Virus record (IMG/VR): IMGVR_UViG_3300035070_002626
Coordinates: 1 to 64,000 of that record
DNA: 64,000 nucleotides
Reading direction: 5' to 3' (one strand)
The notes below the pieces were generated by a model, which was given only the letters and a program-made list of their open reading frames with translations, was not told the origin of the DNA and searched no databases. Numbering within the stretch: position 1 is the stretch's first letter; each line of letters starts with the position of its first letter. A program made the position numbers and the translations under genes. Below are positions 268-63,319 of the stretch, in pieces.

Positions 268-941
268 CAACAGCAATACTAATACCAGCTAGGTATAACA
301 GCACACGCTACCCTGGTAAACCATTAGCTATGTTAGATGGCGTTCCAATGATAAAGCGTGTGTATGACGCTTGTGTTGCGTCTAACCTACCAACATACGT
401 GCTCACTGATGACATGCGCATCTTTAACTTATTCAATGTTGATAACTGCTGGGTTGATCAAACAGATTATGCCAATGGCACAGAACGATGCGCAGGTGCA
501 GTTAAGAATGACTTCTTTGCAAAATATAATCAGTTCATTAACGTACAAGGTGATATGCCTGATGTGACTTTAGAAATGATTGAAAAAACTAAATGGCATT
601 TACAACACTATTCAGTAACTACCATGTGCGCTATGATGCCAGCAGAACAGCAGAACGATCCAAACTCAGTTAAACTAGTAAGAGCAGCTGATAAGTGTTT
701 GTGGTTTGGTAGAGGCATGACAGGATATGGCGATTGGCACTTAGGCATTTATGGATATAAGCGTAATGCACTAGAAATGTATCCTAATTTGACCAGCACA
801 CGTGAAGAGCGATTAGAAGGTCTAGAGCAACTACGTTGGCTAAAAAATGGATGGGATATAGGTGTATTCCCATGTGTGTTTAATGGTACCGAAATCAATA
901 CACCAGAGGATGCAGAAGCGTGGCACAAAAACTTAAATTAA
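264..941 (+). CDS. kdsB: CMP-KDO synthetase (3-deoxy-manno-octulosonate cytidylyltransferase)
   Basis: [32 protein letters not shown] and LEQLRWL motifs. Confidence 0.93.
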
Positions 942-2458
942 AACGAATACTCGGAGTTAGTGCAGGATTTCATGATGCAGCATTAACTGTGTTGCATGAT
1001 GACGAAATTGTATTTGCTGGCCATAGTGAGCGTTACAGTAAACAGAAAAACGATAATAATATTTGCCTAGAACTTGAGATGGCAGCTCTTGCACACGGTC
1101 CATTTGATAAAATTGTATACTATGAAAAACCGTGGAAACGGCAGTTGCGTAAATTGCTCAGCGGTGAACCCTGGGGCGGTAACTGGCGACTAAGGTCGGA
1201 ACTTAAAAATACAATTCCAATAATAATGTCAGAACACAAAGGTGTTATAACCAGTGTTGGGCATCACATGAGTCACGCTGCTGGTGGATTTCAAACATCG
1301 CCTTACGAAGAAGCTGCTGTTGTTGTAATTGATGCAATCGGCGAAATAGATACTATCAGCATTTACAAAGCTAGATACGACGATGCTACCACTGGTTACT
1401 TGGGGTATAAGAAGCACAGACAGGCCCAGTACAAGCGTGTTTGGTGTCAGCAGTATCCTAACAGCATCGGCATGTACTATAGTGCTGTTACACAGCGTGT
1501 AGGCTTGCGCCCAATGGATGAAGAATACATCACAATGGGTATGGCAGCATATGGCGATGCATCAAAAGCATACCACACGTTGGTTGATAATTTAATAGAC
1601 AACACATCAACAGCAAAATTTAAAAGAAACCTGCACATTGGCATGCAAGACTTGGAGTTTTCTGCAGGCGTTGACGAAATGGATATTGCAGCCGCAGGAC
1701 AGCAACTTTGCGAAGAGCTGATTATGCAAGTGATGCACAAGGCCAAAGAATTAACAGGTTCAAACAATCTTGTTTACATGGGTGGTGTTGCACTTAATTG
1801 TGTAGCGAACAGCAAGCTGGGTGATATTTTTGACAACATATGGATCATGCCCAACCCGGGAGATGCAGGCAGTAGTTTAGGTGCCGCGGCACTAGCATAT
1901 GGTAAAAAGGTCAATTGGCGCACAGCATTACTGGGCACTGATATTCCTGGCAAGTATCCAGTAAAGAAATTAATCAAACAATTAAAGACTAAAAAGATAG
2001 TAGGAGTGGCAAGTGGTAAGGCCGAGTTTGGCCCACGTGCTCTTGGAAACAGAAGTTTACTTGCTGATCCACGTGGTGCCGAAATTAAAGACAAAGTAAA
2101 TGAAATAAAAAAGCGGCAAAAGTTTCGTCCTTTTGCTCCAGTGATACTTGAAGAACATGTACACGATTATTTCAACATGCCAAAAAATCAAAATACATCA
2201 CATTACATGCAGGTAGTAGCGCCAGTTAAACACCCGGACCAGTTTCCTGCTATTACACATGTAGACGGTACAGCAAGAGTGCAAACAGTGCCCAGCGACA
2301 GTAGTGGCATTAGACAATTATTAGAAGCTTGGTACGAAGAAACAGGGTGCCCGATGTTGTTAAACACATCATTGAATATCCGTGGCGAACCAATGGTTGA
2401 TGACAGAGCAGATGCAGATAGATTTGAAAAACAATATGGAGTAAAGGTGTGCAGCTAA
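920..2458 (+). CDS. Carbamoyltransferase, NodU/CmcH/TobZ family (copy 1)
   Basis: HDAA, ERYSKQK, HHMSHA, GGVALNC, EFGPRALGNRS, KRQKFRPFAP, HVDGTARVQTV, LNTSLN. Confidence 0.93.
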   Translation: MAQKLKLKRILGVSAGFHDAALTVLHDDEIVFAGHSERYSKQKNDNNICLELEMAALAHGPFDKIVYYEKPWKRQLRKLLSGEPWGGNWRLRSELKNTIPIIMSEHKGVITSVGHHMSHAAGGFQTSPYEEAAVVVIDAIGEIDTISIYKARYDDATTGYLGYKKHRQAQYKRVWCQQYPNSIGMYYSAVTQRVGLRPMDEEYITMGMAAYGDASKAYHTLVDNLIDNTSTAKFKRNLHIGMQDLEFSAGVDEMDIAAAGQQLCEELIMQVMHKAKELTGSNNLVYMGGVALNCVANSKLGDIFDNIWIMPNPGDAGSSLGAAALAYGKKVNWRTALLGTDIPGKYPVKKLIKQLKTKKIVGVASGKAEFGPRALGNRSLLADPRGAEIKDKVNEIKKRQKFRPFAPVILEEHVHDYFNMPKNQNTSHYMQVVAPVKHPDQFPAITHVDGTARVQTVPSDSSGIRQLLEAWYEETGCPMLLNTSLNIRGEPMVDDRADADRFEKQYGVKVCS

Positions 2459-4599: not shown

Positions 4600-5771
4600 T
4601 TTAATTTTCCTAATATTGTTTCTAATCTATTGGCTTTGCTAGCCAAGAATAACTGTTGATTGTGCAGCAAATCTTCTTTACAATCTATATACATTTGATG
4701 TATTTTTTTAGATTTTGCAATTCGTTCCATTTCGTTGCACACTGCATTCCAGCGCTCAGTGTTGTTAGCAATGTTGTCATAGCTGTGATCAACCACATGA
4801 TCGAATGTCTTGTATCCCATGTCACGTAACTGTTGTATACTACCAGCGGCACCAACAATTACAAATGGCTGTGCATGCTTAATAGGTTTAAATGTTTTTT
4901 CTGTTAAGAACACACCATTGCTTTGATCTACATCTAAATGTGTTTCAATTACAAAATTAAAGTATGCATCGTCGTGATGTGCTGCCACAGTGTGATGGTA
5001 CAAATTATGTTCGTTGCTGCTCAACAGGTCAGCATGGAACGGGCATAGCTTTAAAAAGAATTCGGTGTGATGTCTAAGGCTACCAAAGCTATCAACTTCG
5101 ACTGGATTATCTTCTGGTAAATCACCCACACTAATATCAGCATTGTAACTAAAGAATCCTTTTTCGTGCAACCCTTTCATCCACAGTCTGGTCATTGTAT
5201 TAGCCCGCCACCATTTGTGTGTGCGCACAAGTGCAGTAAAATTTTTACTGCGTGGACGGTCATGGAATTCAGTTGCTAAACCTTCATTACGGAGCCGGTA
5301 TAACAGCTCGTCGTCACATAAGTAGCTGAATTGTGCAAGATCATGGCTTTTAGTGTTTGCGGTGGTAAAATGCAGGTTTTCTGGCGAAATGCCTGCTGTA
5401 ACCATTTGTTTTTTAATATGTTTTTTTATGCGAAAAGGGTTATCTCCTTCGCTGTAGAAAAACCAAATTTTTAGTTGGTTGTCTACGAGACGTTTTACAA
5501 CGTTTTTTGGGATAATATCAAACCATTCCACAGTGAAATCAAAAAAGCTAAGACTAATTGGATATATGCTGCCATTGGGTGCATCATCAGTTTTGACCAC
5601 AGTGTAGTCAATGCCTTCTTGTTTTAGATATTCGTAAAAATGCACTGGTTCGCTAAACGGGCTGTTCAAACTAAATTTGCGCCATTCTGGTGTGTACGGA
5701 GCTGCATCCCAAGTAGCACAGTTAGGAAAAGGCACATCGCCTTTAAATTGATCTGCACAAAATGTTACCAT
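4596..5771 (-). CDS. Putative glycosyltransferase-like protein ('ET..TEK..KPI..PF' family)
   Basis: C-terminal VIET...FLTEKTFKPI...QPF...GYKTF...SYD, reminiscent of the GT-B/GT10 donor-binding motif; start chosen at the ATG overlapping the upstream stop. Confidence 0.5.
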   Translation of the reverse strand: MVTFCADQFKGDVPFPNCATWDAAPYTPEWRKFSLNSPFSEPVHFYEYLKQEGIDYTVVKTDDAPNGSIYPISLSFFDFTVEWFDIIPKNVVKRLVDNQLKIWFFYSEGDNPFRIKKHIKKQMVTAGISPENLHFTTANTKSHDLAQFSYLCDDELLYRLRNEGLATEFHDRPRSKNFTALVRTHKWWRANTMTRLWMKGLHEKGFFSYNADISVGDLPEDNPVEVDSFGSLRHHTEFFLKLCPFHADLLSSNEHNLYHHTVAAHHDDAYFNFVIETHLDVDQSNGVFLTEKTFKPIKHAQPFVIVGAAGSIQQLRDMGYKTFDHVVDHSYDNIANNTERWNAVCNEMERIAKSKKIHQMYIDCKEDLLHNQQLFLASKANRLETILGKLK

Positions 5772-19650: not shown

Positions 19651-20844
19651 TTAGAAAATTAATTTTGCAAATTCAGGAAAAGTTTTTTGAAAGTTTTCTT
19701 TGCGAATTTGATCCAACGCCCCGTTTACTTCTAGAAATTTGTCCCATTCGGCAGGATCCCTAGGTTGTTGGATAACATTAGTCAAGTCTTGGAATTCTTC
19801 GTCTTGACTGAGTTTTTCTATCACGGCTGTCTTTACCGATTCAGGCATGTTTTTAATAAACAAGTATGCCGGCTCGACCAGCAAATTCCAGTACGGTGGC
19901 AATGGCAGAATATTCATGATAGCTGCTTTAATTTCGGGTAGATAGAAAATGTTTAATACACCTACAGTGCAGATACAATCAATGTAGTATTTTACATTAT
20001 GCTCTTCAAAATATTTTTTCCAATCTGCGATATTGTTCTTAACAACTTCGTATTTTAACCCATGACGTATGTATTCAAAATGATCAGCAATACCGTCGAT
20101 GCTTACACCAATTTCAACTTCTTGGAAATGTTTAATATTTGGTATTTTGTGCACAATGTTAACACTGCCATTGGTATTGATGTATAATACAATATGAGAT
20201 GAGTGTCCAGTCTTTACTAATTGTTCAAGAAGTTTGATTACTTTTTTATTATACATAGGCTCGCCGCCGAATAATTCAAGACGCTTTAACCCAGGAGCCA
20301 TGTTGAGTATTTCTTCGAGTTGATCATCTGACCAATTTGTTGCAGCCTGATTGGTTACATAGTATTCTTTCCCGGTAAGTTTTTTTAGTTTTACGCTATC
20401 GGCTATCCAGCGATTGCTATCACCTGGATGACACACTCTACATTTAGCATTGCATATGTTTCCATTCTTGATAGTCAACACCTCTGGGCCACTGAGATAG
20501 TCACCGCTGTTAACTCGGTTAATTAATTCGTCAGCATATGTCTCGGAATCAATAAAAGAGTATTCACTTGTTGAATTAACTGGATCAAACAATCGCTGCC
20601 GCAAGCTTTTTTTATTGTTTTCTTCTTCGTGCCAGCAGCGGTTGCACACAGGGCTTTTTTTATTGTTAATAAAGTCCTGGCGCAGTTGTTCAATTTCGCT
20701 GCTACGCCATTGCTCTAGTATGCTGTTGCCTGATGCTTTCCATGTTGTGCCACCAAGATACGGGCAAGGGGAAAAGCTAGTTGACGGATGTGTAGTGCAT
20801 TGTATAAACGGGGCTACACAAAAATTCTCCGTCAACTTTTTCAT
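19651..20844 (-). CDS. Radical SAM protein with N-terminal twitch/SPASM-like Cys motif
   Basis: FCVAPF..PC..C..C N-terminus; CNAKCRVC; GGEP; TNGS; SIDG. Confidence 0.85.
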   Translation of the reverse strand: MKKLTENFCVAPFIQCTTHPSTSFSPCPYLGGTTWKASGNSILEQWRSSEIEQLRQDFINNKKSPVCNRCWHEEENNKKSLRQRLFDPVNSTSEYSFIDSETYADELINRVNSGDYLSGPEVLTIKNGNICNAKCRVCHPGDSNRWIADSVKLKKLTGKEYYVTNQAATNWSDDQLEEILNMAPGLKRLELFGGEPMYNKKVIKLLEQLVKTGHSSHIVLYINTNGSVNIVHKIPNIKHFQEVEIGVSIDGIADHFEYIRHGLKYEVVKNNIADWKKYFEEHNVKYYIDCICTVGVLNIFYLPEIKAAIMNILPLPPYWNLLVEPAYLFIKNMPESVKTAVIEKLSQDEEFQDLTNVIQQPRDPAEWDKFLEVNGALDQIRKENFQKTFPEFAKLIF

Positions 20845-20862
20845 TATATCAACCTTGTATTT

Positions 20863-20937
20863 TGGCATCCCGTAGGGGAATCGAACCCCTCTTGACGGCT
20901 TGAAAAGCCGTAGTCCTAACCGATAGACGAACGGGAC
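20863..20937 (-). tRNA. tRNA-Glu(UUC)
   Basis: Cloverleaf; anticodon arm ACGGC-TTTTCAA-GCCGT; GTTCGATTC T-loop; encoded CCA. Confidence 0.93.
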
Positions 20938-21116: not shown

Positions 21117-21204
21117 TGGCAGACAGTGTGGGATTCGAACCCACGGAACCTTTCGGTTCGGCGGATTAGTAATCCGCTGCCTTCGACCACTCGGCCAACT
21201 GTCC
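21117..21204 (-). tRNA. tRNA-Ser with unusual ACU anticodon
   Basis: Class II cloverleaf with long variable arm; GCGGA-TTACTAA-TCCGC; G73; CCA. Confidence 0.88.
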
Positions 21205-24104: not shown

Positions 24105-24239
24105 AATTAATGATTTTCTCGTGAGCAGGATTCTCTTTTGCTCAACGTATTAATTATGTAGACCTAACCTGTAAAAATGCAAAATCCAGCGATTTTGTAA
24201 TAAGATAAAATGAGAATGTCACATTGCTGCAACACTCTC

Positions 24240-24520
24240 TTGATCGTTCTGTTGCTAGGTGATCCACCCCGGGAGCCTAACTAGGCTGCCATTGCCATTT
24301 CTGGCGCTCTATTTGCGTTTGCATTTAGAAAGTTTGTTCGCGGTAACGGCGCTTACATCCCGGTAACTCCACTCTGCTATCTCGTCAGTCGATCCTAGTT
24401 CTGCCCCATCATAATTACTCTACGCCGTAAATTTGTAGTTTTTACGCTACAAAGTAATTATGGTGGAGCAGCGCGGTACTGCCCCGCGGTCCTGTCCGTA
24501 TTCACATCACTTCAACGTTA
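24240..24520 (-). ncRNA. ssrA: Two-piece (circularly permuted) tmRNA, alphaproteobacterial type
   Basis: Acceptor piece ends ...CGCGGGGCAGTACCGCGCTGCTCCACCA at 24461; intervening spacer 24408-24460; coding piece starts GGGGCAGAACTAGGATCGAC at 24407; tag ANANRAPEMAMAA* at 24322-24281; 3' CTAGCAACAGAA. Confidence 0.92.
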
Positions 24521-24527
24521 CAATCTA

Positions 24528-24556
24528 TTTATACACTAGTATTAGTTGTTTGTCAA
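24528..24556 (-). promoter_or_regulatory. Promoter for tmRNA
   Basis: TTGACA-N17-TATAAA. Confidence 0.7.
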
Positions 24557-24703
24557 CCTATTTTTTAAAGGTTCAATTGCTGCCGTTGCTTGACTGCGAT
24601 TCCAATTAAACTTCTTCATAGCATCAGCATATAGTTGTTCGTTGTCCTTGGATGCAACAATAAGTCCACGCAAGAAGTTATCTATATCAATCCAATTGTT
24701 CAT
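24542..24703 (-). CDS. Small hypothetical protein (53 aa, MNNWIDIDNF...)
   Basis: Translated by hand; ATGA overlap with the upstream gene. Confidence 0.55.
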   Translation of the reverse strand: MNNWIDIDNFLRGLIVASKDNEQLYADAMKKFNWNRSQATAAIEPLKNRLTNN

Positions 24704-27041: not shown

Positions 27042-27129
27042 TGGAGTCAAGCCAGGGAATCGAACCCTGCCACAGCGGCGACTCGTGACGCCTAGTCGTG
27101 TCTATGCTGCTAGCAAACCTGCACTGACT
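27042..27129 (-). ncRNA. tRNA-like element with non-canonical D/anticodon arms
   Basis: Canonical T arm CAGGG-TTCGATT-CCCTG, acceptor-like AGTCA/TGACT and 3' CCA, but no 7-nt anticodon loop. Confidence 0.55.
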
Positions 27130-27308
27130 TATTTTATTCTTTTCCAATGTAATTCGCCATCCAACGGTAAACGCCCTCTGTATTCTACACCCGTTTCGTC
27201 GTCAATTAGTCGCCACTTACTTGGGCACTTGGTAATTACGTTAAGTTCAACAGCTACATCAATAGCGGGTACTTCTGTACCGTCTTGTAAAGTTCTAGTC
27301 AAGCTCAT
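27129..27308 (-). CDS. Small hypothetical protein (59 aa, MSLTRTLQDG...TKCPSKW..ID.ETG..Y)
   Basis: Translated by hand; GGAGG RBS. Confidence 0.6.
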   Translation of the reverse strand: MSLTRTLQDGTEVPAIDVAVELNVITKCPSKWRLIDDETGVEYRGRLPLDGELHWKRIK

Positions 27309-27723
27309 TCTTTATCCTCCATCGTGCAATAACGTTAGTTAACACTGTTGGAGTGTCAGTGAACCATTTACTTACATGATAGTCACATTCCAGTGGTTCT
27401 TCGAACATTTTATTTGTATCGTCAAATCGACTCTCTTTGATGGTATCCATCCAAACTGTAAAGTCTGCATCAAACTCTAATCGAAACCTGCGAGTAGGAC
27501 AAACAAAGTCTGCCACAGCAATTTTGCCTGCCATAACAACACCATCTGCCAAGTGTCGCATACGTACTGCTTGACGCATACGCCCTATTGGTGTAAAATC
27601 CCAATCGTTGTAATGTTTACGCACTGCATCTGCATTGATATGCACACCACCAATTAAATCTGCAAATGGTTTTGCTAATGTAGTCTTGCCACTACCTGGC
27701 AATCCAAAAATTAAAATTTTCAT
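27295..27723 (-). CDS. Adenylylsulfate kinase-like P-loop kinase
   Basis: GLPGSGKTT, NADAVR, DF...GR, ADFVCP, FEEP. Confidence 0.75.
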   Translation of the reverse strand: MKILIFGLPGSGKTTLAKPFADLIGGVHINADAVRKHYNDWDFTPIGRMRQAVRMRHLADGVVMAGKIAVADFVCPTRRFRLEFDADFTVWMDTIKESRFDDTNKMFEEPLECDYHVSKWFTDTPTVLTNVIARWRIKNELD

Positions 27724-27733
27724 ATTAAATAAA

Positions 27734-28456
27734 TTATGCCTGTTTAAAACTGTCCTCGATTAGATCTTTAATAGTGTGCAAGTTAGCACCAATATCTAAT
27801 ACCACTCTAGGCTCGTTGCTTCTGTTTAATACCCAATGGGCATATCTATAGTTATTAATCAAGTATGCATTGCGTTCAACAATTGGAAGATTTCCCCATT
27901 TATAAAAACCAAATTCATTGCCTTCACTCCATTTTAGAGGAATGTAAATTTTATTTAATGCACGGGCACCCTGGGTAGGATCAACGTGAGGGAAAAGATA
28001 TCCGCCTGGCGGCAACACATAAAAGTTAACAATGTTGATATCCTGGGGGTTTGGAAAAAGCTTCTCAACAAACTGTCTAATAGGGTGATCAACATTTAGT
28101 CGCCATTCAAATTTAAAGTCATTGCGGTGTAACATACACAGCCGGTCTTCGTCATTTGCTTTCTGTTTGTCTGCTGCAAATTTTACCCATGCATCCCAGT
28201 CTGCCGGGCCAAACAAAACTTGACCGTTCCATTCTTTGATTTGATAGTCAACCTCAATGTGTTCGTTGTCATTGGTAAACAGCCATTGCTGTCTCCAGTT
28301 GGTGCTTTGTTCTACTGCTTGGTCAAATACATTTTGATCAAACTCCGGGACATCAATGTTTAACTTGGTCCAAGGTACTCCGCTGTCTAGATAATGGTCA
28401 AGATCAAACTGGTTATTATTGCTTAGTTCTTCGATTAGTTTAGGGAATTTATGCAT
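27734..28456 (-). CDS. Asp/Asn beta-hydroxylase-like 2OG-Fe(II) cupin
   Basis: LPPGG.L.PHVD, IYIPL, H.V.N.S..PR. Confidence 0.7.
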   Translation of the reverse strand: MHKFPKLIEELSNNNQFDLDHYLDSGVPWTKLNIDVPEFDQNVFDQAVEQSTNWRQQWLFTNDNEHIEVDYQIKEWNGQVLFGPADWDAWVKFAADKQKANDEDRLCMLHRNDFKFEWRLNVDHPIRQFVEKLFPNPQDINIVNFYVLPPGGYLFPHVDPTQGARALNKIYIPLKWSEGNEFGFYKWGNLPIVERNAYLINNYRYAHWVLNRSNEPRVVLDIGANLHTIKDLIEDSFKQA

Positions 28457-29121: not shown

Positions 29122-29193
29122 ATGTATTACATTATATACTATCTACTTATAGTGTCAATCCTGCTCGGTTAAAAAAACTCTACAATACATAAC

Positions 29194-31223: not shown

Positions 31224-31940
31224 TTATACTGTATCTACTTGTTCGGTTAAAATTCTAAAAGTGTCGTTCCAGTCAGCAACTTTGTATGATTTGCCTCTGT
31301 TTTGTTCAGCTATTGCATCTGCTAAAGGGGCGTCATTGCCGCCGGGGAAAATCGCATCACCAAAAAAATGTAGTTCGTCAGTGTCGGCAAAATCAACTAA
31401 TATCTGACTTTTGTTATTGCCTTTTGGTGCAATATCTAATCCTGTTTCCCCACCTGATGTAGCAAGTAACTCTGGAAACATTAAGTTAAATGATTTAACA
31501 ATCCTAGCACGTTCACGTTGTGCTTTATCCCATGTAACGTATAATGCACGTTCGGTTAAACTAGCGTTACGACCTACTACACTAAAGTTTACCATACCAG
31601 ATCGTTCTTCGATGTGATTGCCAGTGCGTACTGGAAATTTACTTTCGTACTCACAACTGTCTAAGAAATACCTGGCAAGATCGGGTAACCTCCAATTACT
31701 AGTACGAACATTTTTATCGCCTTGCCACACATCACTACCAGAACATTGGTAAACACGCTGACATTTGTGGTAAATGTACTCGCCAATTTGTTCGACAGTT
31801 TTAGGTTTGTCGCTCCCAGTGACAAGATACACAAGATTGTTTTCACAAAACTTGCTAAACCACACAGCAAATTGTTTGTCCATGTGCTGCCTGCTATCAG
31901 TAAGTGTACCGTCTACATCAAATATGTACTTTTTTGCCAT
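31224..31940 (-). CDS. HAD-IIB phosphomannomutase-like enzyme (PMM family)
   Basis: FDVDGTLT, VTGSD, IE.R.GMVNFS..GR, GG...DI, FFGD...GGND. Confidence 0.85.
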   Translation of the reverse strand: MAKKYIFDVDGTLTDSRQHMDKQFAVWFSKFCENNLVYLVTGSDKPKTVEQIGEYIYHKCQRVYQCSGSDVWQGDKNVRTSNWRLPDLARYFLDSCEYESKFPVRTGNHIEERSGMVNFSVVGRNASLTERALYVTWDKAQRERARIVKSFNLMFPELLATSGGETGLDIAPKGNNKSQILVDFADTDELHFFGDAIFPGGNDAPLADAIAEQNRGKSYKVADWNDTFRILTEQVDTV

Positions 31941-33444
31941 CTTCTTTCCTGATTACATAATTGTTAATTATTAATACATCAAGACCGCATTTCTTAAATG
32001 TGGCAACTGCATCCTCGGGTGTTTCTACAATAGGCTCCTGGCAGTTGAAGCTGGTGTTGAGCAACATAGGAACGCCTGTTAGGGTATAGAATGCATTTAT
32101 TAAGTCGTAGTAGCAAGAATTAAACTCGCGCTGTACAGTCTGTATACGTGCTGTGCCGTCTACATGTGTTACACCAGGAATAGTATTACTTGTAACTGGC
32201 ATGATACGGCTCATGTACGGACTAGGCTGGTTGGTATCAAAATAATCTTGATAATGTTCATACAATACACTTGGCGCAAATGGTCTGAAGTCTTCACGCA
32301 GTTTAATTTTACTGTTGATAATATCTTTAATATCTGGCTTGCGTGGATCTGCAAGTATACTCCGATTGCCTAACGCTCTGTGCCCGCTTTCGCTAGCACC
32401 CTGATACCATCCAACTATTGCACCATCGGCAATAGCAGCGGCAACTTCAGTGTATACTTCTTCCATTGATTTTTGTTGATAGTACAATCCGTTGAATATA
32501 GCAGTGTCTACAATGTAGTCTTCTCCTGCATACACTGTAGGAATATGTGTGTTACCATTTAAAATGTAATCAGCATGCATGTAAACGCCTAATGCCTGGC
32601 CTTCGTCACCAGGAGCCGGCGGCACATGTACATTTGTGTAATGCTTTGTAAACTCTTCATTCATATAACCGTTGTATGCAACTCCGCCTGCAATGCATAA
32701 ATTGTCTGATGTTTTAAGAGGATATACGTGTTTTGTAACAAGTTCAAATGTAACTTGTTGTAGCGTAAATGCTACATCCTCTTTAGCAACACGCTGTATA
32801 ATATCATGTGCACCGTCAGGGAGTCGTTGATTGGGATTTTCTAAATAACGATGAATCATTGTGTAAACTTCATCGTTATATTTTCCAAATCCTACCAAGC
32901 CCATAACCTTGCCGGCTTGGAGGAATTCAAATCCAAGATTCTGTGCTAATGTGTTCCAACACCCGCCAATTGACAGTTCCTTGGTCAAGTCAGTGATTGT
33001 ACCGTGTTTATTAATAAAGATACAATTAAAATTATAACCCTTGTCGTCAATCGCTAGTACATCACTTTCTTTAAAGCCTGAATTTAGAAATGCATAAGCA
33101 GCATGACTTTGGTGATGGTCGATATAGTAATAACTATCTGTGTGTAATCTATCCCATAGATTGTTTGGCTTAAACTTTAAAAAATCTGTGTCCGGTAAGG
33201 TCTCTTCTACTAAGTCTTCAACATATTCATGTCCTAAATTAGAAATAGTAAATGCAAATACTTGCTCTTTATTATAGTTAGGCAAGAAATGGTCGTCGAA
33301 AAAATCCCTACAGGGCACAGGGTCACGCAAGAAATCCGGATTAAGATTATGCTTTACTCTGGTGTGCCGTTCTATTTGGTTATGAACCAGACCGTTGTAT
33401 GTATTGTGATCGTGGTGATTTACTGCTATAGAAAATATTTTCAT
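31918..33444 (-). CDS. Carbamoyltransferase, NodU/CmcH family (copy 2)
   Basis: HHQSHA, AGKVMGL, GGVAYN, RALGNRSILADP, REDFRPFAP, HVDGTAR, LNTSFN. Confidence 0.9.
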   Translation of the reverse strand: MKIFSIAVNHHDHNTYNGLVHNQIERHTRVKHNLNPDFLRDPVPCRDFFDDHFLPNYNKEQVFAFTISNLGHEYVEDLVEETLPDTDFLKFKPNNLWDRLHTDSYYYIDHHQSHAAYAFLNSGFKESDVLAIDDKGYNFNCIFINKHGTITDLTKELSIGGCWNTLAQNLGFEFLQAGKVMGLVGFGKYNDEVYTMIHRYLENPNQRLPDGAHDIIQRVAKEDVAFTLQQVTFELVTKHVYPLKTSDNLCIAGGVAYNGYMNEEFTKHYTNVHVPPAPGDEGQALGVYMHADYILNGNTHIPTVYAGEDYIVDTAIFNGLYYQQKSMEEVYTEVAAAIADGAIVGWYQGASESGHRALGNRSILADPRKPDIKDIINSKIKLREDFRPFAPSVLYEHYQDYFDTNQPSPYMSRIMPVTSNTIPGVTHVDGTARIQTVQREFNSCYYDLINAFYTLTGVPMLLNTSFNCQEPIVETPEDAVATFKKCGLDVLIINNYVIRKEDGKKVHI

Positions 33445-33487
33445 CAGACTCTCTGTTTTGTTAAACATATAATAACACTGATAGTTG

Positions 33488-34081
33488 CTATACGTCAACC
33501 ATTCTTTTTAAATCGTGAATAGTAAAATCACTATCTTTGGCGATAGTCACTATTTCGCCCATTCGTTCAAACACTTCTTCGCCATCTGCGGTCTCTGTTT
33601 GATTAACATGTGCCTGAGCTTCATCTAACCAAAACGTGGTAAAATAATCAATATCGCTATTGTCTGTAAAATTAAACTTGTATATACCATTGAATCCAAA
33701 ATAAAGGTTGTTAATAATGAACTCAGGCGGGGTTTCATTTTTTTCGTGGTAGTCACTAACAATATTCTCAGGCCAGTTAACATAAAACGGCATTGTGTGC
33801 AGCACTGTGTGCAGTATTGAATTATTATCTATTGTTATATCTAGTAGTTCAACGCTTAAATCAGCTACAATATTATTACTATCGTCAACAATGGTATCGT
33901 CGTTGGTTTTGTTATAGTGTTCAATGGACAATACATTTTGCAACAATGGTTGAATGTTTAACGTGTGTTCATTAATCTCAGAAATTTCAGTATCAACATA
34001 TACTGTATCGTTAACAGATAGTCTCACCTTAGGTGATTTTCCATTGGCACAGTTGCCACGGAGCTTAATCTTTATTTCCAT
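33488..34081 (-). CDS. Hypothetical beta-rich protein (paralog family)
   Basis: SPKVRLSVND...HYNKT..DT...VEL.DITID...LYFGFNG.Y.F.F. Confidence 0.6.
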   Translation of the reverse strand: MEIKIKLRGNCANGKSPKVRLSVNDTVYVDTEISEINEHTLNIQPLLQNVLSIEHYNKTNDDTIVDDSNNIVADLSVELLDITIDNNSILHTVLHTMPFYVNWPENIVSDYHEKNETPPEFIINNLYFGFNGIYKFNFTDNSDIDYFTTFWLDEAQAHVNQTETADGEEVFERMGEIVTIAKDSDFTIHDLKRMVDV

Positions 34082-34099: not shown

Positions 34100-35653
34100 T
34101 TAAAAATTTTGCTTTGAATGTGCCCATGGTTCAATGATATCAGCTGATAAACTGTTCTGTTCTCGATCAAACTTTACATTGTTAATCATAGTTCCAGTAT
34201 TATCTGTTAGTAGCTGAACTTCGTTCCAGCTACTCAGCAATTGCTTTGTATAGTTTGCTGCTTCGAAAACTGGATACCCCAATTCTTCAACATGTGATTG
34301 TAGGATAATCCTTCTCTTCAATCGTTCCTTGTATGTTAATGTCGGATTATCAACACAAACCCAATCATTAACATGATCATTGTCCTGCACTAGGTTATAT
34401 TTTTCTCTATCATCATATAATGGAGTGCGTTTTAATAGATTCAGTGTAAGTCCTAAATTTACTTCTTCGATTGTGCCGTTATCTAGATATGGCTTGTATC
34501 GAGTAAACATCTCTTTTGTTAAATCAAAATCTTCTATGGTCTCTGTAGGATACCCTACAATCATTAACATACGTACTTTGATCCCTACTCTATCTAGTTG
34601 GGAAATGCTGTAGTTAAGATCTTCTTCGCTATATCCCTTTTTCATGTGTTCTCTCACTGCCGGAGAACCGCTTTCGATTCCAACTAACATTGTACCTGCA
34701 CCAGCTGCCTTCATGACATCAAAGTCTTCGGGTGGCATCTGTTTTGGCCCACGTACAATAAAATGGGTGTCCCATATAAACTTTTTTTCTTCTGGTAGTG
34801 TTTTTCTGTATTCAGCTAACTCTAGAGTCATTTCCCTAAATGCTTTCATACTACCATTAATTAGACTATCTGTAAATCTAAATGCAGTTGCACCATATGC
34901 TTCAACTTGTTGACGCATTTCGTCAGCAATATTTTTGCCACTGCGATAGTAAAACTTTGGCCACATACTTGCAACATCACAAAATGTGCATTTTCTTACA
35001 CATCCTCTACTGCCAGTAATCGGCAATGCTTCCAACCCTTTGGAATTAGTGTAGGTTTTTAGTTCGTAGTCGTCATAATTGGGAAAAGCTAAACTATCAA
35101 CATCTACGATTTGCTGAGGAGGCTTGCCATTAATTCCAGGATAATCAATGTTTCCTTTAAGTAACTCGACTAATGCAAGTTCTCCTTCGCCCCGTATATA
35201 TGCGTCAATGATACGATTTTCGTGCAGAGACTCTGCAAATTTAAAATCTGTAGCAATTCCGCCGCCTCCGATTACAATTTTAATAGCAGGGTTGAGCTTT
35301 TTAATTGCAACAGATAGTAAGCGAGTTGCTCGTTGACTATTATAACTAAACACACTCATACCAACCCATGTTGGATTTTGATTAACAATTTTTTCGGCCC
35401 ACGATTCGATAACAGGAGCTAATAATTTCCATGTTTTATTATTATAGAATGTGTGATAAAAAAAGAAGTTGTCAATGGCGTTATGTAGTTCGTGATTATG
35501 AAACTGCTGATCAATTTCGGCATTAAGGTCAAAGATAATACTACTAAATCCGTGTGCAGATAAACTTCCCTTTAGCAATGCTGCTCCTGCTGGAGTATAC
35601 CCAAAATCGTCAACGATTCTCGGCGGTATTACTAACACAATATCTTTATTCAT
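34100..35653 (-). CDS. B12-binding radical SAM enzyme (class B methylase-like)
   Basis: N-terminal cobalamin-binding fold (GMSVF, IVIGG, GEGE); SRGCVRKCTFC; GIESGS; IVGYPTET. Confidence 0.88.
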   Translation of the reverse strand: MNKDIVLVIPPRIVDDFGYTPAGAALLKGSLSAHGFSSIIFDLNAEIDQQFHNHELHNAIDNFFFYHTFYNNKTWKLLAPVIESWAEKIVNQNPTWVGMSVFSYNSQRATRLLSVAIKKLNPAIKIVIGGGGIATDFKFAESLHENRIIDAYIRGEGELALVELLKGNIDYPGINGKPPQQIVDVDSLAFPNYDDYELKTYTNSKGLEALPITGSRGCVRKCTFCDVASMWPKFYYRSGKNIADEMRQQVEAYGATAFRFTDSLINGSMKAFREMTLELAEYRKTLPEEKKFIWDTHFIVRGPKQMPPEDFDVMKAAGAGTMLVGIESGSPAVREHMKKGYSEEDLNYSISQLDRVGIKVRMLMIVGYPTETIEDFDLTKEMFTRYKPYLDNGTIEEVNLGLTLNLLKRTPLYDDREKYNLVQDNDHVNDWVCVDNPTLTYKERLKRRIILQSHVEELGYPVFEAANYTKQLLSSWNEVQLLTDNTGTMINNVKFDREQNSLSADIIEPWAHSKQNF

Positions 35654-35687
35654 ATTTCTATTTACCGCTAATCGCATATTTGTGTTA

Positions 35688-35763
35688 TGGTGCCCCAAGA
35701 GAGACTCGAACTCCCGACCTACTGATTACAAATCAGTTGCTCTACCAGCTGAGCTATTGGGGC
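35688..35763 (-). tRNA. tRNA-Thr(UGU)
   Basis: ACTGA-TTTGTAA-TCAGT; CCA. Confidence 0.95.
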
Positions 35764-44556: not shown

Positions 44557-45173
44557 TATCGTTTCTCTATAATTTTATCAGCCAAGCCCCATTCAACTGC
44601 TTCTGCCGCAGTAAGGAATGTATCAAACTTCATAGTCTCTGACATTTCGTCATATGTCTTGCCGGCTGTGTTGTGCTTAACGTAAAGCTCTGTAAGGCGT
44701 CGATTTACTTTTTTGCTCTCTTCCATGCTGCGTACTGCATCTTCAAACTGTAGCTCTTGGACATACACACTACCGCTTGTTCCACGTGTACCTGAGCTCA
44801 CACGGTGAATCATTGTTCGTGATTCTGGCAATACAATACGCTTGCCTGCTGCACCTGCTTGTGCAAGGAATGAGCCCATGCTGCATGCTTGTCCGATAAC
44901 TACTGTGGATACATCGCACTTGATAAATTGCATGGTATCGTAAATACCAAGTCCTGCACTTACCTGCCCTCCTGGGCTGTTAATATAAAGCAAGATGTCC
45001 TTGTCTGGGTCTTCGCTTTCTAAAAACAACAGTTGTGCAATAATTGCATTAGCCATATTGTCCTCAACTGGACCATTCAGCATGATAATACGATCTTTCA
45101 GTAATCGACTGTAAATGTCGTATGCACGTTCGCCTTTTGAAGTAGTTTCAACTACCATTGGAATTAAGGACAT
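44556..45173 (-). CDS. clpP: ATP-dependent Clp protease proteolytic subunit
   Basis: [24 protein letters not shown] (Ser), MIH (His). Confidence 0.95.
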
Positions 45174-45649
45174 TATTCAGAAAACCTTTCTTTGCGTACA
45201 ATAAATGGTGTGTAAATTGCGCTGTTAGCACCGTGCTCCATGCACTCTGCAGATTCGCACCAACAACGATTGTCTGTTGCTTCTCTAATAAGTTTATCAG
45301 CAAACTTCCATGCGTGTTCTGCAAACTTTTCTGCACCCACTCCGTCTAGTACTGTAACTTCTGCTAGACCCATGTTTTCAAGTTCTGCAAACTTGTACAA
45401 GAACGGATCTTCTCTATCAATTACTGTCTTATGATCAAATGTATCTTCTAGCCATGCTTTAAGAGGTTTAAGTCCTCCAAAGTCAACGGCCCAGTTTTTA
45501 TTGTCTAGCTCGCTACATCCAAATGTAAACTTGAAACCCAAACTATATCCGTGTAAGAATTTACAATGTGAATGGTCTGCATGTGGTTGACGGAACACCG
45601 CTGAAAGTCCGATGTTGTGTCCGTAAGTTTTTGTTGAATAATGTGGCAT
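45173..45649 (-). CDS. queD: 6-carboxy-tetrahydropterin synthase
   Basis: [22 protein letters not shown]-terminal E...N.A. Confidence 0.9.
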
Positions 45650-47746: not shown

Positions 47747-48445
47747 TTACTTTCCACAGGAAAACTCTTGTTGCAATTTGATGTTGTCAAAGAATTCTTT
47801 CTTTGTACCAGAGTCTTCCCTGAAACTACCTTTAAGCACAGTTGTTTGGGTAAGACTACTACTCGCCATAATGCCGCGATTCTCACAACAACCGTGTGTT
47901 GCTTGGATATACACACCCAGGTTTTCTGCACCGGTGGCGCTGGAAATCTCCCGTGCAATATCATTTGCAAGTTCTTCTTGTAGAGTTCCACGCCGAGCGC
48001 ACCATTGTGCAATACGTGTGTACTTGCTGAGTCCAATAAGTTTATCAGCAGCAATAATACCAATGTATGCTACACCGCTTACTGGCTGGTGGTGATGACT
48101 ACACATGCTCTTTAGCTCACTGCGCACTACTAGCATACCTTCATAGCGATCGTCGCTGTCATTGGGAAATGCAGTTGCACTTGGCATAGGATCATAACGT
48201 CCTGCCATGATCTCGTTAAAGTACATCTTAGCCAGTCGACGTGCAGTGCCGTGTGAGTTAGGGTCGTTCTCTCGATCAATCAACAGTGTGTCGAGCACAC
48301 CTTCAAACGCTGTAGTAGCCTCGTTAATCAAATCTTCTTTAATGTTAGGTGTAATATAATCTGAAATATTATCGCCGGCCCAGTATCGTTTGCCTTCTGC
48401 TGTCATATTATCACGCAGAATTTGCGATGTTGTTTTGTTTGTCAT
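47747..48445 (-). CDS. folE: GTP cyclohydrolase I
   Basis: T.RR.AKM, SMCSHH, IGLSK..R, LQE, H.C...RG. Confidence 0.95.
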   Translation of the reverse strand: MTNKTTSQILRDNMTAEGKRYWAGDNISDYITPNIKEDLINEATTAFEGVLDTLLIDRENDPNSHGTARRLAKMYFNEIMAGRYDPMPSATAFPNDSDDRYEGMLVVRSELKSMCSHHHQPVSGVAYIGIIAADKLIGLSKYTRIAQWCARRGTLQEELANDIAREISSATGAENLGVYIQATHGCCENRGIMASSSLTQTTVLKGSFREDSGTKKEFFDNIKLQQEFSCGK

Positions 48446-48451
48446 TTGTTT

Positions 48452-48478
48452 CTCCGAGTTAGGGTCGTGGATGACCAC
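48452..48478 (-). promoter_or_regulatory. Candidate compact pseudoknot leader sequestering the folE RBS
   Basis: GGUC-AUCCAC-GACC-CUAAC-UCGGAG; loop UCC is complementary to GGA of the Shine-Dalgarno. Confidence 0.4.
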
Positions 48479-62124: not shown

Positions 62125-63159
62125 TTATAATCCGGCAAACCATGTATCAGAAAAGTCTCTAACTTTAGCAAGTTCGATTTGTGCTGGTTCGTATTCAGGG
62201 TGCACAGGACTAAACACATGATGGAAGTTGTATTCCTCAAGCGACCAAGAGCCCCACATTTGCAATTTAGAATATTCCACTATGTCTACATCAAATTCCT
62301 TGCAAAAATAGTAAAATGGTTCTATTTCTTGATAATTTTGCTGTTGTAAAATCATCCTGGTATGTAATTTAAAACCTAATTCATGTTTCTTGTTTTGTAA
62401 AAAATGCATTGCTTGTAGTAACTTTGGCCATTTCCCACCGCGGCGTATTTTTTCGTATGTGTCGGCTTGTGATGCATCAATACTTACAGTTATTTTGTTA
62501 ATGTTATTAACTTTGTTTCCGAATCGATGCCAGTTTTGTTCGCACAGCAACCCATTTGTACCAAAGTCAAATTCTACATTGGGAAATTTATCAATATCAA
62601 TTGAGTTTACAAAATCCATTAACATAGGACTAGCAAACACTTCACCTGCCCCGCCAAGTTCTATTTTTATTTTTTTATCTGTTGCGTCAGCAAACAAGTT
62701 GTTAGAAAGAGTTTCGCCTAGCTTGCGCTGTTCTTCTTGTTTTGATAATGGAGTTTTTATAATATGACGTCGGCAGCTAGGACAACTTAGATTACAAGTT
62801 TGGTCCCCATTGAAACTAATATGATGAGGCATTTCAAATTTTGATGGATCGTCGAATAGTTCTCTTATGTTCGGCGGCACTGACTTGATCTTGTTTAGCC
62901 CGTTGTTAGCAATTACAGCACACCAATCTGCATCACAATAAACATAAGATCCATCAATGATACTTTGTCTAATTTTTTGTGCCAGTTCAGACGACAACAA
63001 TTCCTTTAGTGTGTTTTCTTTTAAATTTCCAATGGTAGTTGGCATCCATCGGTTACATCCACACATTCGAACATCGCCCTCTAGGGTAACCTCGATCATA
63101 ACAAATGGTGACAAACAGTACTTCCCTTGGTACTGTTTAGCCGGAAACATTTCAATCAT
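62125..63159 (-). CDS. Radical SAM protein with N-terminal SPASM-like domain
   Basis: YCLSPF..G.V..C, IGN; CNLSCPSCR; GE.FAS; TNG; SIDA...YEKIR.GG.W. Confidence 0.85.
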   Translation of the reverse strand: MIEMFPAKQYQGKYCLSPFVMIEVTLEGDVRMCGCNRWMPTTIGNLKENTLKELLSSELAQKIRQSIIDGSYVYCDADWCAVIANNGLNKIKSVPPNIRELFDDPSKFEMPHHISFNGDQTCNLSCPSCRRHIIKTPLSKQEEQRKLGETLSNNLFADATDKKIKIELGGAGEVFASPMLMDFVNSIDIDKFPNVEFDFGTNGLLCEQNWHRFGNKVNNINKITVSIDASQADTYEKIRRGGKWPKLLQAMHFLQNKKHELGFKLHTRMILQQQNYQEIEPFYYFCKEFDVDIVEYSKLQMWGSWSLEEYNFHHVFSPVHPEYEPAQIELAKVRDFSDTWFAGL

Positions 63160-63319
63160 ACTTAACAGCCCGTACTGTGTTGGCATATTTTCGTTTAATC
63201 TTTTTCACAGTGGGCTTGCTGCGAGAAATAACTGAACCTAATGGTGCCGAAACTGTGGCAATACTACCACTTGCTGTTCCGCCTGTACTTACATCTTCTA
63301 GTAACTCTCGAATCTTCAT
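63152..63319 (-). CDS. 55-aa protein MKIRELLE... (possible internal head protein)
   Basis: Translated by hand; ATGA coupling with the upstream gene. Confidence 0.6.
   Translation of the reverse strand: MKIRELLEDVSTGGTASGSIATVSAPLGSVISRSKPTVKKIKRKYANTVRAVKYD

What the first reader, a model, noticed from the sequence alone, without database searches (positions are those of the whole stretch)
27042..27129. tRNA mimic: perfect T arm and CCA but a rebuilt anticodon domain
Seen: AGUCAGU GCAGGUUUGC UA GCAGC AUAGACA CGACU AGGCGUCACG AGUCG CC GCUGU GG CAGGGUUCGAUUCCCUG GCUUGACU CCA. It has a bulged acceptor stem, a tiny D-like hairpin, and an extended interrupted stem with a 10-nt loop. Pairing is retained throughout, unlike random decay. 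Inference: a decoy for anticodon nucleases or uncharged-tRNA sensors, an aminoacyl donor for non-ribosomal transfer, or a Y-RNA-like species.
Basis: partly seen in the sequence, partly recalled or inferred. Interest (0 to 1): 0.65.

Follow-up and report, generated by a model that had tools for sequence, protein, structure and literature searches.

The report
Phage tRNA-shaped RNA, not a tRNA
This is a real gene for a small tRNA-shaped RNA from a previously undescribed family found among the tRNA genes of marine phages, often right after tRNA-Arg(UCU); it keeps the top half of a tRNA but carries a long arm with a fixed loop sequence where the anticodon arm should be, so it almost certainly does not decode, and its job is unknown.

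Summary
No tRNA finder or Rfam family recognises it. Pattern scans, a synteny-guided search and two covariance models recovered 97 copies (48 distinct sequences), all in uncultivated viral or metagenomic contigs. None was found in 50,697 deposited phage records or, by pattern, in 185,579 cellular genomes. Covariation strongly supports a cloverleaf-like fold: 92.9% of cells paired against 77.6% in shuffles, and 20 of 25 pairs show compensatory changes. The fold has a 6-bp acceptor, a 10-nt D-like segment GCAGGUUNGC, a long arm (7-bp outer stem, internal loop, 4-5-bp middle stem, 9-13-nt loop carrying AGGCGUC), a canonical T arm, a variable discriminator and an encoded CCA. Copies sit in tRNA arrays, most often 2-6 nt after tRNA-Arg(UCU), as T4's unexplained rnaD/rnaC do. 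Alleles are swapped as modules between phages. This is a non-decoding tRNA-like RNA whose function is not established; a decoy or adaptor role acting through the conserved loop is my best guess.

The parts
27042..27128 (-). Whole RNA gene, 87 nt (G1 = 27128, A87 = 27042)
   Evidence: Sequence; CM R2 hit 92.2 bits, E 1e-18; boundaries fixed by where conservation stops in homologs with unrelated or near-identical flanks
27123..27128 (-). Acceptor 5' strand GUCAGU (positions 1-6)
   Evidence: Pairs with 27046-27052; all 6 pairs show compensatory changes across the family
27113..27122 (-). D-like segment GCAGGUUUGC (7-16): 2-bp GC/GC clip around AGGUUU; the GG probably contacts the T loop
   Evidence: G15 and C16 are invariant in 48/48 distinct sequences although not forced by the last search pattern; position 14 varies U/A/C. 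The GG-T loop contact is inferred from tRNA knowledge
27106..27112 (-). Outer stem 5' strand UAGCAGC (17-23)
   Evidence: Pairs with 27070-27076 (one A.G mismatch in this allele); 7/7 pairs covary in the family
27098..27102 (-).
   Evidence: Pairs with GAGUC at 27080-27084 (A.A mismatch in this allele); 4/5 pairs covary
27085..27097 (-). Apical region (32-44) holding the family's constant motif AGGCGUC (27087-27093)
   Evidence: AGGCGU was forced by the last pattern, but the following C and the motif's position are constant, and the motif is also present in L127, found by CM only
27080..27084 (-). Middle stem 3' strand GAGUC (45-49)
27070..27076 (-). Outer stem 3' strand GCUGUGG (53-59), abutting the T stem
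   Evidence: the 3' CUG was never forced by a pattern yet is nearly always present opposite CAG
27053..27069 (-). T arm CAGGG-UUCGAUU-CCCUG (60-76)
   Evidence: 3 of 5 pairs covary, the two G-C pairs next to the loop are invariant
27046..27052 (-). Acceptor 3' strand GC(U)UGAC (77-83) with one bulged U
   Evidence: the bulge is confined to this allele subgroup
27042..27045 (-). Discriminator U and encoded CCA
   Evidence: across the family the discriminator is A39/U7/C1/G1 and CCA is encoded in about 44 of 48
27129..27308 (-). Upstream 59-codon ORF whose stop codon (27129-27131) abuts G1
   Evidence: this flank is 89-91% conserved in L047/L139
29444..29520 (-). tRNA-Arg(UCU), 2.3 kb upstream here; the immediate upstream neighbour of the element in many other phages
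29131..29158 (-). Perfect sigma-70-type promoter (TTGACA-16-TATAAT) heading the unit tRNA-Leu - 4 ORFs - element
   Evidence: consensus match only

Best explanation
It is the gene for a small (78-88 nt) non-decoding, tRNA-shaped RNA, a member of an undescribed family carried in the tRNA islands of marine phages, probably of alphaproteobacterial (Rhodobacteraceae-type) hosts. Shown: a covariation-supported fold with a tRNA 'top half' (6-bp acceptor closed by the two ends, canonical T arm, GG-containing D-like loop, NCCA end) and, in place of the D stem and anticodon arm, one long irregular arm ending in a 9-13-nt loop with the constant sequence AGGCGUC. Also shown: residence in tRNA arrays, most often 2-6 nt after tRNA-Arg(UCU); exchange as a discrete module between very different phages. 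Inferred: it is transcribed with its neighbours, cut out by RNase P at G1 (U at -1 in most copies) and 3'-matured like a tRNA, and folds into an L-like shape through the GG/T-loop contact. It then works through its arm: the constant loop binds a trans-acting partner (a protein, or possibly an RNA), so the molecule acts as a tRNA-shaped decoy or adaptor in the traffic around tRNAs, plausibly in phage-host conflict and plausibly linked to tRNA-Arg(UCU). My odds: functional structured tRNA-like RNA, ~0.9; not a decoder, ~0.85; processed by the tRNA machinery, ~0.7; decoy/adaptor acting through the loop, ~0.3. The overall confidence given (0.45) is for the statement as a whole.
For: - **Fold:** 92.9% of cells paired vs 77.6% in shuffles (0/500), 20/25 pairs with compensatory change, 240 vs 77 double-change cells, 34-43% pairing when partners are slid. 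RNAalifold recovers the helices on its own.
- **Not a tRNA:** ARAGORN finds none, even with introns and relaxed scores. The Rfam tRNA model and all 4227 families give no hit on six alleles, while neighbouring tRNAs score 43-72 bits. There is no 7-nt loop and no U33.
- **Selection:** the element is among the best-conserved DNA between otherwise unalignable phage loci, and the fold is kept although alleles diverge to 67%.
- **Context:** 25/52 contexts have a tRNA within 60 nt upstream, 12 of them tRNA-Arg(UCU). The pair persists where it is the only tRNA in the locus. U at -1 in 33/53 contexts.
- **Modularity:** near-identical alleles sit in unrelated flanks, and different alleles sit in 89-97% identical flanks. 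The family is found in a jumbo T4-like myovirus and in relatives of SIO1/CRP-type roseophages.
- **Against one synthetase identity:** the discriminator and acceptor sequence vary.
Against: - There are no expression data.
- No partner was identified: no protein family accompanies the element in more than 17 of 62 contexts, and the complement of the loop is not enriched in the window or the loci.
- The constancy of GCAGGUU and AGGCGU is partly circular, because the widest scans required them.
- One lineage has lost the 5' two-thirds (L001/L008), so the element is dispensable there.
- tRNA-Arg(UCU) can be even better conserved (100% between the window and L025), so high conservation partly reflects horizontal spread of tRNA-island modules rather than selection on this RNA alone.
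- Modular turnover is suggestive of conflict but is not specific to it.
Confidence: 0.45

Rival explanations
1. Processing signal only ('punctuation', like plant-mitochondrial t-elements or the mascRNA that follows MALAT1). The tRNA-like top half recruits RNase P and 3' processing so as to release the upstream tRNA-Arg's 3' end and to separate flanking mRNAs; the excised RNA itself has no further role.
For: It abuts other genes very tightly: a stop codon touches G1 in the window, an ATG overlaps the terminal A of CCA in variant C, and it lies 2-6 nt after tRNAs. It lies inside an mRNA operon in the L072 clade (RNR-Grx-tRNA-Arg-element-ORF-PhoH). There is no terminator or own promoter in the window.
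Against: A processing signal needs only the acceptor/T minihelix and elbow. It does not explain a covarying 12-bp arm of constant architecture with a constant apical loop sequence. Ordinary tRNAs already provide such cuts in these arrays, and the element's own 3' end would still need another cut.
Confidence: 0.15
2. A genuine aminoacylated tRNA of unusual build: either a decoder with an expanded anticodon loop, or an aminoacyl donor for a non-ribosomal transferase.
For: It has an intact acceptor/T arm and an encoded CCA in about 44/48 sequences, sits in tRNA arrays, and has a loop sequence as constant as an anticodon would be. Unusual tRNAs are present in related phages (tRNA-Ser(ACU); the odd Phosso tRNA-Ser genes).
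Against: The loop is 9-13 nt with no U33 and no purine 37. The arm has about 15 stacked layers against ~10 in a tRNA (from the fold). The discriminator is A/U/G/C and the acceptor pairs vary freely, which is unlike one identity set. Every triplet inside AGGCGUC would read a G+C-rich codon that a 40% G+C phage has no obvious need to supply (inference). No synthetase, Fem/MprF-type or other aminoacyl-transferase gene is in the window or a conserved neighbour.
Confidence: 0.1
3. A DNA-level element (recombination, homing or integration site) that merely looks like a tRNA.
For: Precise cassette-like replacement at identical boundaries. The same allele occurs in unrelated flanks. A 3' fragment is left behind in L001/L008, as at tRNA-type att sites.
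Against: Compensatory changes in four helices are the signature of selection on an RNA fold, not on a DNA site. Strand-specific tRNA features (T loop, CCA) and constant co-orientation with neighbouring tRNAs also argue against it.
Confidence: 0.04
4. A Y-RNA-like partner of a Ro/Rsr protein (YrlA type).
For: Some jumbo phages encode Ro/TROVE proteins, whose cellular partners are tRNA-like RNAs (PMC7824862). The element has a tRNA-like module plus a long helix.
Against: There is no Rfam Y-RNA/YrlA hit even at E <= 10. No TROVE domain was found among the Pfam-scanned window ORFs of at least 140 aa. In YrlA (from my knowledge) the ends lie in the Ro-binding stem, not in an acceptor stem with CCA. 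Only 64 kb of a roughly 300-kb genome was seen.
Confidence: 0.03
5. A decaying tRNA pseudogene.
For: It is not recognised by tRNA finders; one lineage carries a truncated remnant.
Against: 48 distinct sequences keep the same non-tRNA architecture with 20/25 covarying pairs. It is among the best-conserved DNA segments between otherwise unalignable loci.
Confidence: 0.01

Closest known systems
Phage T4 stable RNAs species 1 (rnaC, 139 nt) and species 2 (rnaD, 119 nt)
   Same: They lie in the tRNA cluster of a T4-type phage directly downstream of tRNA-Arg(UCU) (rnaD starts 1 nt after it). rnaC has a perfect T arm and a partial acceptor-like closing stem, and rnaD ends in GCACCA. Their bodies are non-tRNA. 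From my knowledge, their function is still unknown.
   Different: They are 30-60 nt longer. There is no detectable homology: R2 gives 11.4 bits on rnaC's 3' part, the same as for any T4 tRNA. They have no GCAGGUUNGC and no AGGCGUC motif. They are positional and architectural analogues only.
Canonical tRNA (Rfam RF00005)
   Same: An acceptor stem formed by the two ends, a 5-bp T stem with a GGUUCRANUCC loop, NCCA at the 3' end, GG in the D-like loop, and residence in tRNA arrays.
   Different: The acceptor has 6 bp rather than 7, there is no D stem, and a ~15-layer arm with a 9-13-nt loop replaces the anticodon arm (no 7-nt anticodon loop, no U33). There are 0-1 nt where the variable loop would be. 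It is not detected by ARAGORN or the tRNA covariance model.
tRNA-like domain plus helix 2 of tmRNA
   Same: A tRNA top half with a stemless or minimal D-loop analogue and a long irregular helix where the anticodon stem would be. A permuted tmRNA gene lies 2.5 kb away in the window.
   Different: It has C3-G70 rather than the G3.U70 alanine identity pair, no tag reading frame and no pseudoknots, and there is no Rfam tmRNA hit on the element.
mascRNA / plant-mitochondrial t-elements (tRNA-like processing signals)
   Same: tRNA-like structures that are not decoders and are cut by tRNA-processing enzymes; the element abuts coding sequences.
   Different: mascRNA scores only 17.5 bits against a gathering score of 42.5, and only on the T arm. 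Those are eukaryotic or organellar elements. They do not explain a conserved arm and loop.
Bacterial Y RNA YrlA; pseudo-tRNAs such as Bacillus cereus tRNA-Other (from my knowledge)
   Same: Non-decoding RNAs that mimic tRNA parts.
   Different: YrlA is permuted (ends in the Ro-binding stem) and needs Rsr. tRNA-Other keeps a normal cloverleaf. Neither shares this family's arm or motifs, and there is no Rfam hit.

Membership tests
tRNA (canonical, RF00005) | Recognised by tRNA detectors or the tRNA covariance model | tested here: not met
   ARAGORN default, intron and relaxed modes; Rfam at gathering score and at E<=10 / E<=1 on six alleles
tRNA (canonical, RF00005) | Acceptor stem from the 5' and 3' ends with discriminator and CCA; 5-bp T stem with a 7-nt T loop | tested here: met
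   (the acceptor is 6 bp, not 7)
tRNA (canonical, RF00005) | D arm with a 3-4-bp stem and a 7-11-nt loop | tested here: not met
   Only a 2-bp GC/GC clip around 6 nt; the third pair is not conserved
tRNA (canonical, RF00005) | 5-bp anticodon stem with a 7-nt loop, U33 and purine 37 | tested here: not met
   7-bp + 4-5-bp interrupted arm and a 9-13-nt loop; the base before AGG is U/C/A
tRNA (canonical, RF00005) | Aminoacylation and use on the ribosome | not testable with these tools
   Needs acid-gel Northern blots and charging assays
tRNA-Sec / allo-tRNA | 8/5, 9/4, 8/4 or 9/3 acceptor/T-stem arrangement, a 6-bp D stem and a long variable arm | tested here: not met
   6/5 arrangement, no D stem, 0-1 nt at the variable position; no Rfam tRNA-Sec hit on the element
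tmRNA | G3.U70 pair, tag-encoding frame, pseudoknots, Rfam tmRNA models | tested here: not met
   C3-G70; Rfam tmRNA hits lie only at 24238-24573
Y RNA / YrlA | Match to the family model; Ro/TROVE gene in the genome; ends in the Ro-binding stem | tested here: not met
   No Rfam hit; no TROVE domain among the scanned window ORFs; the ends lie in the acceptor stem. Only 64 kb of the genome was available
T4 rnaC/rnaD-type stable RNAs | Location in a phage tRNA cluster just downstream of tRNA-Arg(UCU) | tested here: met
   (2.3 kb downstream in the window itself; immediately downstream in 12 of 52 contexts)
T4 rnaC/rnaD-type stable RNAs | Sequence or structure homology | tested here: not met
   R2 with filters off: 11.4 bits, like ordinary tRNAs
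tRNA-like processing signals (t-elements, mascRNA) | Cleavage by RNase P / RNase Z that defines the ends of flanking transcripts | not testable with these tools
   Adjacency to ORFs and tRNAs is seen; mascRNA model 17.5 bits < 42.5

The most novel reading that the evidence does not exclude
Phages carry a general, unrecognised class of tRNA-shaped RNAs that travel with tRNA-Arg(UCU). This family in marine roseophage-type and jumbo phages, and rnaC/rnaD in T4, would be its members. They act in trans on the tRNA economy of the infected cell, for example as a decoy or inhibitor for a host factor that attacks or limits phage-supplied tRNA-Arg, with the constant AGGCGUC loop as the contact. That would give the 50-year-old T4 'species 1/2 RNA' puzzle a testable function.
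Probability: 0.15. Interest if true: 0.85.

Novelty: new variant of a known kind. Interest (0 to 1): 0.66.

Why it matters
- Non-decoding tRNA mimics are known, but few are known in phages. The classical ones (T4 species 1 and 2) have never been explained.
- This is a compact family with clear covariation, two constant motifs that can be mutated, and a repeated partnership with the commonest phage tRNA, tRNA-Arg(UCU). It also spreads across unrelated phage types that probably share hosts. That makes the question 'what are tRNA-like RNAs in phage tRNA islands for?' experimentally approachable.
- Practically, it is invisible to tRNAscan-type tools and to Rfam, so it is unannotated wherever it occurs. 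A covariance model would fix that.

Tried and rejected
- **Intron-containing tRNA:** ARAGORN with introns and relaxed thresholds gave only an implausible fold. Removing the insert would still leave too small a D arm and variable region, and the U33-like base varies.
- **Thermodynamic support:** none (z = 0.21).
- **Energy-preferred alternative register (CAUAG/CUGUG):** rejected on comparative data.
specific to one subgroup, and its substitutions break pairs.
- **Derivation from a window tRNA:** no parent found; the best is tRNA-Glu at 20.5 bits through the T arm only.
- **Gene conversion of variant C's T arm from a neighbouring tRNA:** no donor in the loci.
- **Mimicry of a host RNA, or a cellular copy:** 0 hits for two patterns in 185,579 genomes. 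These were exact-pattern searches only.
- **Copies in cultured phages:** none by blastn with four alleles. None by CM in one 20.8-kb tRNA-bearing region of Phosso, in T4's tRNA region, or in the RNR-PhoH regions of CRP-207, P12053L and CRP-2.
- **Conserved protein neighbour:** none.
- **Oxygenase synteny:** most homologs sit in another context without the element, but this route did yield L047.
- **Antisense target of the loop:** no enrichment of GACGCCU.
- **Literature:** four searches found no description.
- **Similarity of the 3' end to Phosso tRNA-Ser genes:** confined to the T arm and acceptor.
- **Not used:** structure prediction and complex prediction, since no protein partner was in hand.

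Full report
**1. What is at the coordinates**

ARAGORN finds seven tRNAs in the window but not this one. Rfam at gathering score finds those tRNAs and a permuted tmRNA, but nothing here. At E<=10 the only hit is a 17.5-bit match of mascRNA to the T arm. ARAGORN with introns allowed and thresholds relaxed gives only an implausible fold. The minimum-free-energy fold is no better than shuffles (z = 0.21), and the cloverleaf-like fold is not the MFE. Taken alone, the sequence therefore supports only a perfect T arm followed by an acceptor-like strand and CCA.

**2. The genome**

The window is part of a jumbo T4-like myovirus. It carries a gp43-type DNA polymerase and carbamoyltransferases, 2OG-Fe(II) oxygenases, radical-SAM enzymes, ThyX and sugar-modifying enzymes, and ClpP, FolE and a QueD-like protein. 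The polymerase is 52% identical to that of Sinorhizobium phage Phosso and 46% to Agrobacterium phage Atu_ph07. The window's tmRNA matches the alphaproteobacterial model. An identical stretch lies on a 299,910-bp viral contig. tRNAs are scattered among small ORFs, as in Phosso.

The element has no promoter of its own. It follows four minus-strand ORFs downstream of a perfect TTGACA-16-TATAAT promoter and tRNA-Leu. The stop codon of the last ORF touches its first base, and a convergent oxygenase gene ends 4 nt beyond its CCA.

**3. Homologs, first round**

Exact-pattern scans of viral and metagenome contigs gave six nearly identical variants in completely unrelated flanks. They showed that the 5' A is not part of the RNA, and that the acceptor reads GUCAGY / GC(U)UGAC. 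One variant has three compensatory changes in the T stem. Ordinary tRNAs shared by these phages are only 61-86% identical between groups. Almost nothing but tRNAs and the element aligns between the loci and the window.

At that stage the 52-nt centre looked frozen. One lineage (L001/L008) keeps only the last 25 nt, at the syntenic place after tRNA-Arg.

**4. Second round changes the picture**

Going through homologs of the adjacent oxygenase, I found L047. Its oxygenase is 97% identical in protein sequence, and its flanks match the window right up to the element's borders. Yet the element is only 67% identical, against 91-97% for the 150 nt on each side. L139 and L054 carry still other alleles behind a matching upstream flank; in L139 the downstream flank matches as well.

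Patterns built from what these alleles share brought in about 85 more loci. Model R2 recognises 97 copies: full-length copies score 39.9-98.8 bits, one 5'-truncated copy scores 35.4, and no ordinary tRNA passes E<0.001. They comprise 48 distinct sequences of 78-88 nt.

The 'frozen' form is thus one allele group that has spread among unrelated phages, much as an identical tRNA-Arg(UCU) has. Closely related genomes, in turn, can carry very different alleles. The element behaves as an exchangeable module.

**5. Structure**

RNAalifold on three different alignments, and explicit pair counting, agree on the following fold:

- a 6-bp acceptor stem (a bulged U only in the window's subgroup);
- the 10-nt segment GCAGGUUNGC, with a two-pair GC/GC clip;
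- a 7-bp outer stem that abuts both that segment and the T stem;
- a roughly 3-4 x 3 nt internal loop;
- a 4-5-bp middle stem (GAYAY / RURUC type);
- an apical loop of 9-13 nt containing AGGCGUC;
- a canonical T arm, one discriminator base, and CCA.

| Measure on the 48 distinct sequences | Observed | Control |
|---|---|---|
| Cells forming a standard pair | 92.9% | 77.6% in shuffles (0/500 reach it) |
| Pairs with compensatory change | 20 of 25 | - |
| Double-change cells | 240 | 77 in shuffles |
| Pairing when partners are slid 1-3 columns | - | 34-43% |

By helix, the pairs that covary are acceptor 6/6, outer stem 7/7, middle stem 4/5 and T stem 3/5.

This alignment was fitted by the model and so leans towards it. 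However, the MAFFT-only alignments give the same helices: on A3, 9 of 23 pairs covary and 97.8% of cells pair against 90.0% in shuffles; on A4, 11 of 15 pairs covary.

Its inner stem and 10-nt loop are a subgroup-specific alternative made possible by a ~5-nt insertion that duplicates GAC. In the family fold, the substitutions seen in the window's subgroup (A46C, G50A, C52A) fall in unpaired positions.

**6. What is constant and what is not**

G15, C16 and the C after AGGCGU were never forced by a pattern and are constant; position 14 varies. GCAGGUU and AGGCGU were required by the widest scan, so their constancy is partly circular. However, L127, which only the model retrieved, carries both motifs as well.

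The discriminator is A in 39, U in 7, C in 1 and G in 1 of 48 sequences. The acceptor sequence varies (GUCAGU, AUCAAU, ACCAGU, GCUGUG, GUUAGC and others). CCA is encoded in about 44 of 48, and the rest have CUA, UCA, CCG or CCC. The base before G1 is U in 33 of 53 contexts.

**7. Context across the family**

In 25 of 52 distinct contexts a tRNA ends within 60 nt upstream, and in 12 of these it is tRNA-Arg(UCU).

In one clade the locus reads class II RNR - glutaredoxin - tRNA-Arg(UCU) - element - ORF - PhoH, and that tRNA is the only one in the locus. Its PhoH is 90% identical to that of Roseobacter phage CRP-207 and 74-76% to those of Celeribacter phage P12053L, SIO1 and the Lentibacter phages. 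The three cultured relatives examined (CRP-207, P12053L, CRP-2) have the same backbone without an annotated tRNA there, and the model finds no copy. The tRNA-Arg + element pair is thus an accessory insertion, present in two very different phage types that probably share alphaproteobacterial hosts.

No protein family accompanies the element in more than 17 of 62 contexts. The window's scanned ORFs encode no Ro/TROVE protein, RNA ligase, CCA-adding enzyme or synthetase.

**8. Comparison with what is known**

No Rfam 15 family matches any of six alleles. No deposited phage record contains the element. Two patterns found nothing in 185,579 cellular genomes. Four literature searches found no description.

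The nearest analogue is in T4 itself. tRNA-Arg is followed 1 nt later by rnaD (species 2) and then by rnaC (species 1). rnaC has a perfect T arm and a partial acceptor-like stem, and rnaD ends in GCACCA. The model sees no homology, scoring 11.4 bits as it does for any tRNA. From my own knowledge, the function of these two T4 RNAs has never been established.

**9. How it most likely works**

Shown: it is a selected, structured, tRNA-shaped RNA gene in tRNA arrays, with a top half that carries the features tRNA-processing enzymes use. Its arm cannot present a standard anticodon, because it has about 15 stacked layers against ~10 in a tRNA, a 9-13-nt loop, and no U33.

Inferred: RNase P and 3' maturation release it. 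The GG of the D-like loop docks on the T loop. The constant apical loop is the working end and binds a trans factor.

Two observations make a host-directed accessory function (decoy, sponge or adaptor in the tRNA economy) the best guess, at about 0.3: the variable discriminator and acceptor argue against one synthetase identity, and the modular, fast allele turnover and spread across phage types that probably share hosts fit such a role.

A pure processing-signal role (0.15) does not explain the arm. A real aminoacylated tRNA (0.10) is disfavoured by the geometry and identity elements. A base-pairing role for the loop finds no support in the phage's own sequences, but host targets could not be examined.

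**10. Limits**

- All family members were found by exact or IUPAC pattern scans plus one synteny route. More distant members, and cellular copies lacking the motifs, would have been missed.
- Many compensatory changes separate a few clades, so the number of independent events is smaller than the cell counts suggest. Different pairs do, however, group the alleles differently.
- There is no expression evidence of any kind.

Noticed in passing
window 24238-24573 (-): A complete circularly permuted (two-piece) tmRNA gene of the alphaproteobacterial type encoded by the phage (Rfam alpha_tmRNA 101 bits, tmRNA_permuted 105 bits).
   Followed up: no
window 21117-21204 (-); also L002:4329-4419: A type II tRNA-Ser with anticodon ACU (A34), conserved in related phages although only 67% identical overall. 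A34 is unusual outside tRNA-Arg(ACG), so it may be deaminated to inosine.
   Followed up: partly
L011:1033-1105 (+) (same in L013, L014, L024, L029, L030): Another uncalled tRNA-like gene lies between tRNA-Thr and the element. It has a GGUCUGU/ACAGACC acceptor, a perfect T arm, GCCA and a loop CUGCAAC (Cys-like GCA), but a degenerate D arm and anticodon stem. ARAGORN misses it; the hit of model R1 to it (L011:1038-1100) scores 14.4 bits.
   Followed up: partly
L034 (Sinorhizobium phage Phosso) 19940-20027, 4151-4240, 4397-4483: Phosso's annotated tRNA-Ser genes have a U discriminator and a 5-6-bp D stem with a 3-4-nt loop, an unusual, tRNA-Sec/allo-tRNA-like core.
   Followed up: partly
window 47747-48478, 45173-45649, 34100-35698, 19651-20868, 62125-63186 (all -): GTP cyclohydrolase I (FolE), a 6-pyruvoyl-tetrahydropterin synthase (QueD-like) and several radical-SAM enzymes (one B12-binding). 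These may be a 7-deazaguanine (preQ0-type) pathway for DNA or tRNA modification.
   Followed up: no
window 27295-27723 and 27734-28456 (-) versus L047:3685-4848: The P-loop kinase-like ORF (142 aa) and the Asp/Arg-hydroxylase-like ORF (240 aa) next to the element correspond to a single 387-aa gene call in the close relative L047. The window may have a split or frameshifted gene.
   Followed up: no
L069:86-173 and L069:1865-1948: One viral contig carries two different alleles of the element 1.8 kb apart.
   Followed up: partly
L001:214-238, L008:7083-7107: A remnant: only the last 25 nt of the element (T loop to CCA) survive after tRNA-Arg(UCU), with the 5' 62 nt replaced by 35 AT-rich nt. In L008 the tRNA-Arg has discriminator A where the other tRNA-Arg(UCU) copies compared have G.
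   Followed up: partly
loci (not located individually): ARAGORN calls three 'tRNA-Pyl(CUA)', i.e. amber-suppressor-type tRNAs, and nine tRNA-Ile(UAU) in the element-bearing loci, while tRNA-Lys (4 in all) and tRNA-Phe (3) are rare. This hints at stop-codon recoding in some of these phages.
   Followed up: no
L143 (T4) 4909-5047 (-), rnaC: rnaC contains the repeat GAGUAGCGU twice. The copy next to its T arm forms a hairpin AGUAG-CGUCAA-CUACU whose loop resembles the family's GCGUCA. A 5-mer match is within chance.
   Followed up: no
window 920-2458 (+) and 31918-33498 (-): Two paralogous Nol-type carbamoyltransferase genes lie in one 64-kb stretch, amid many sugar-nucleotide enzymes.
   Followed up: no
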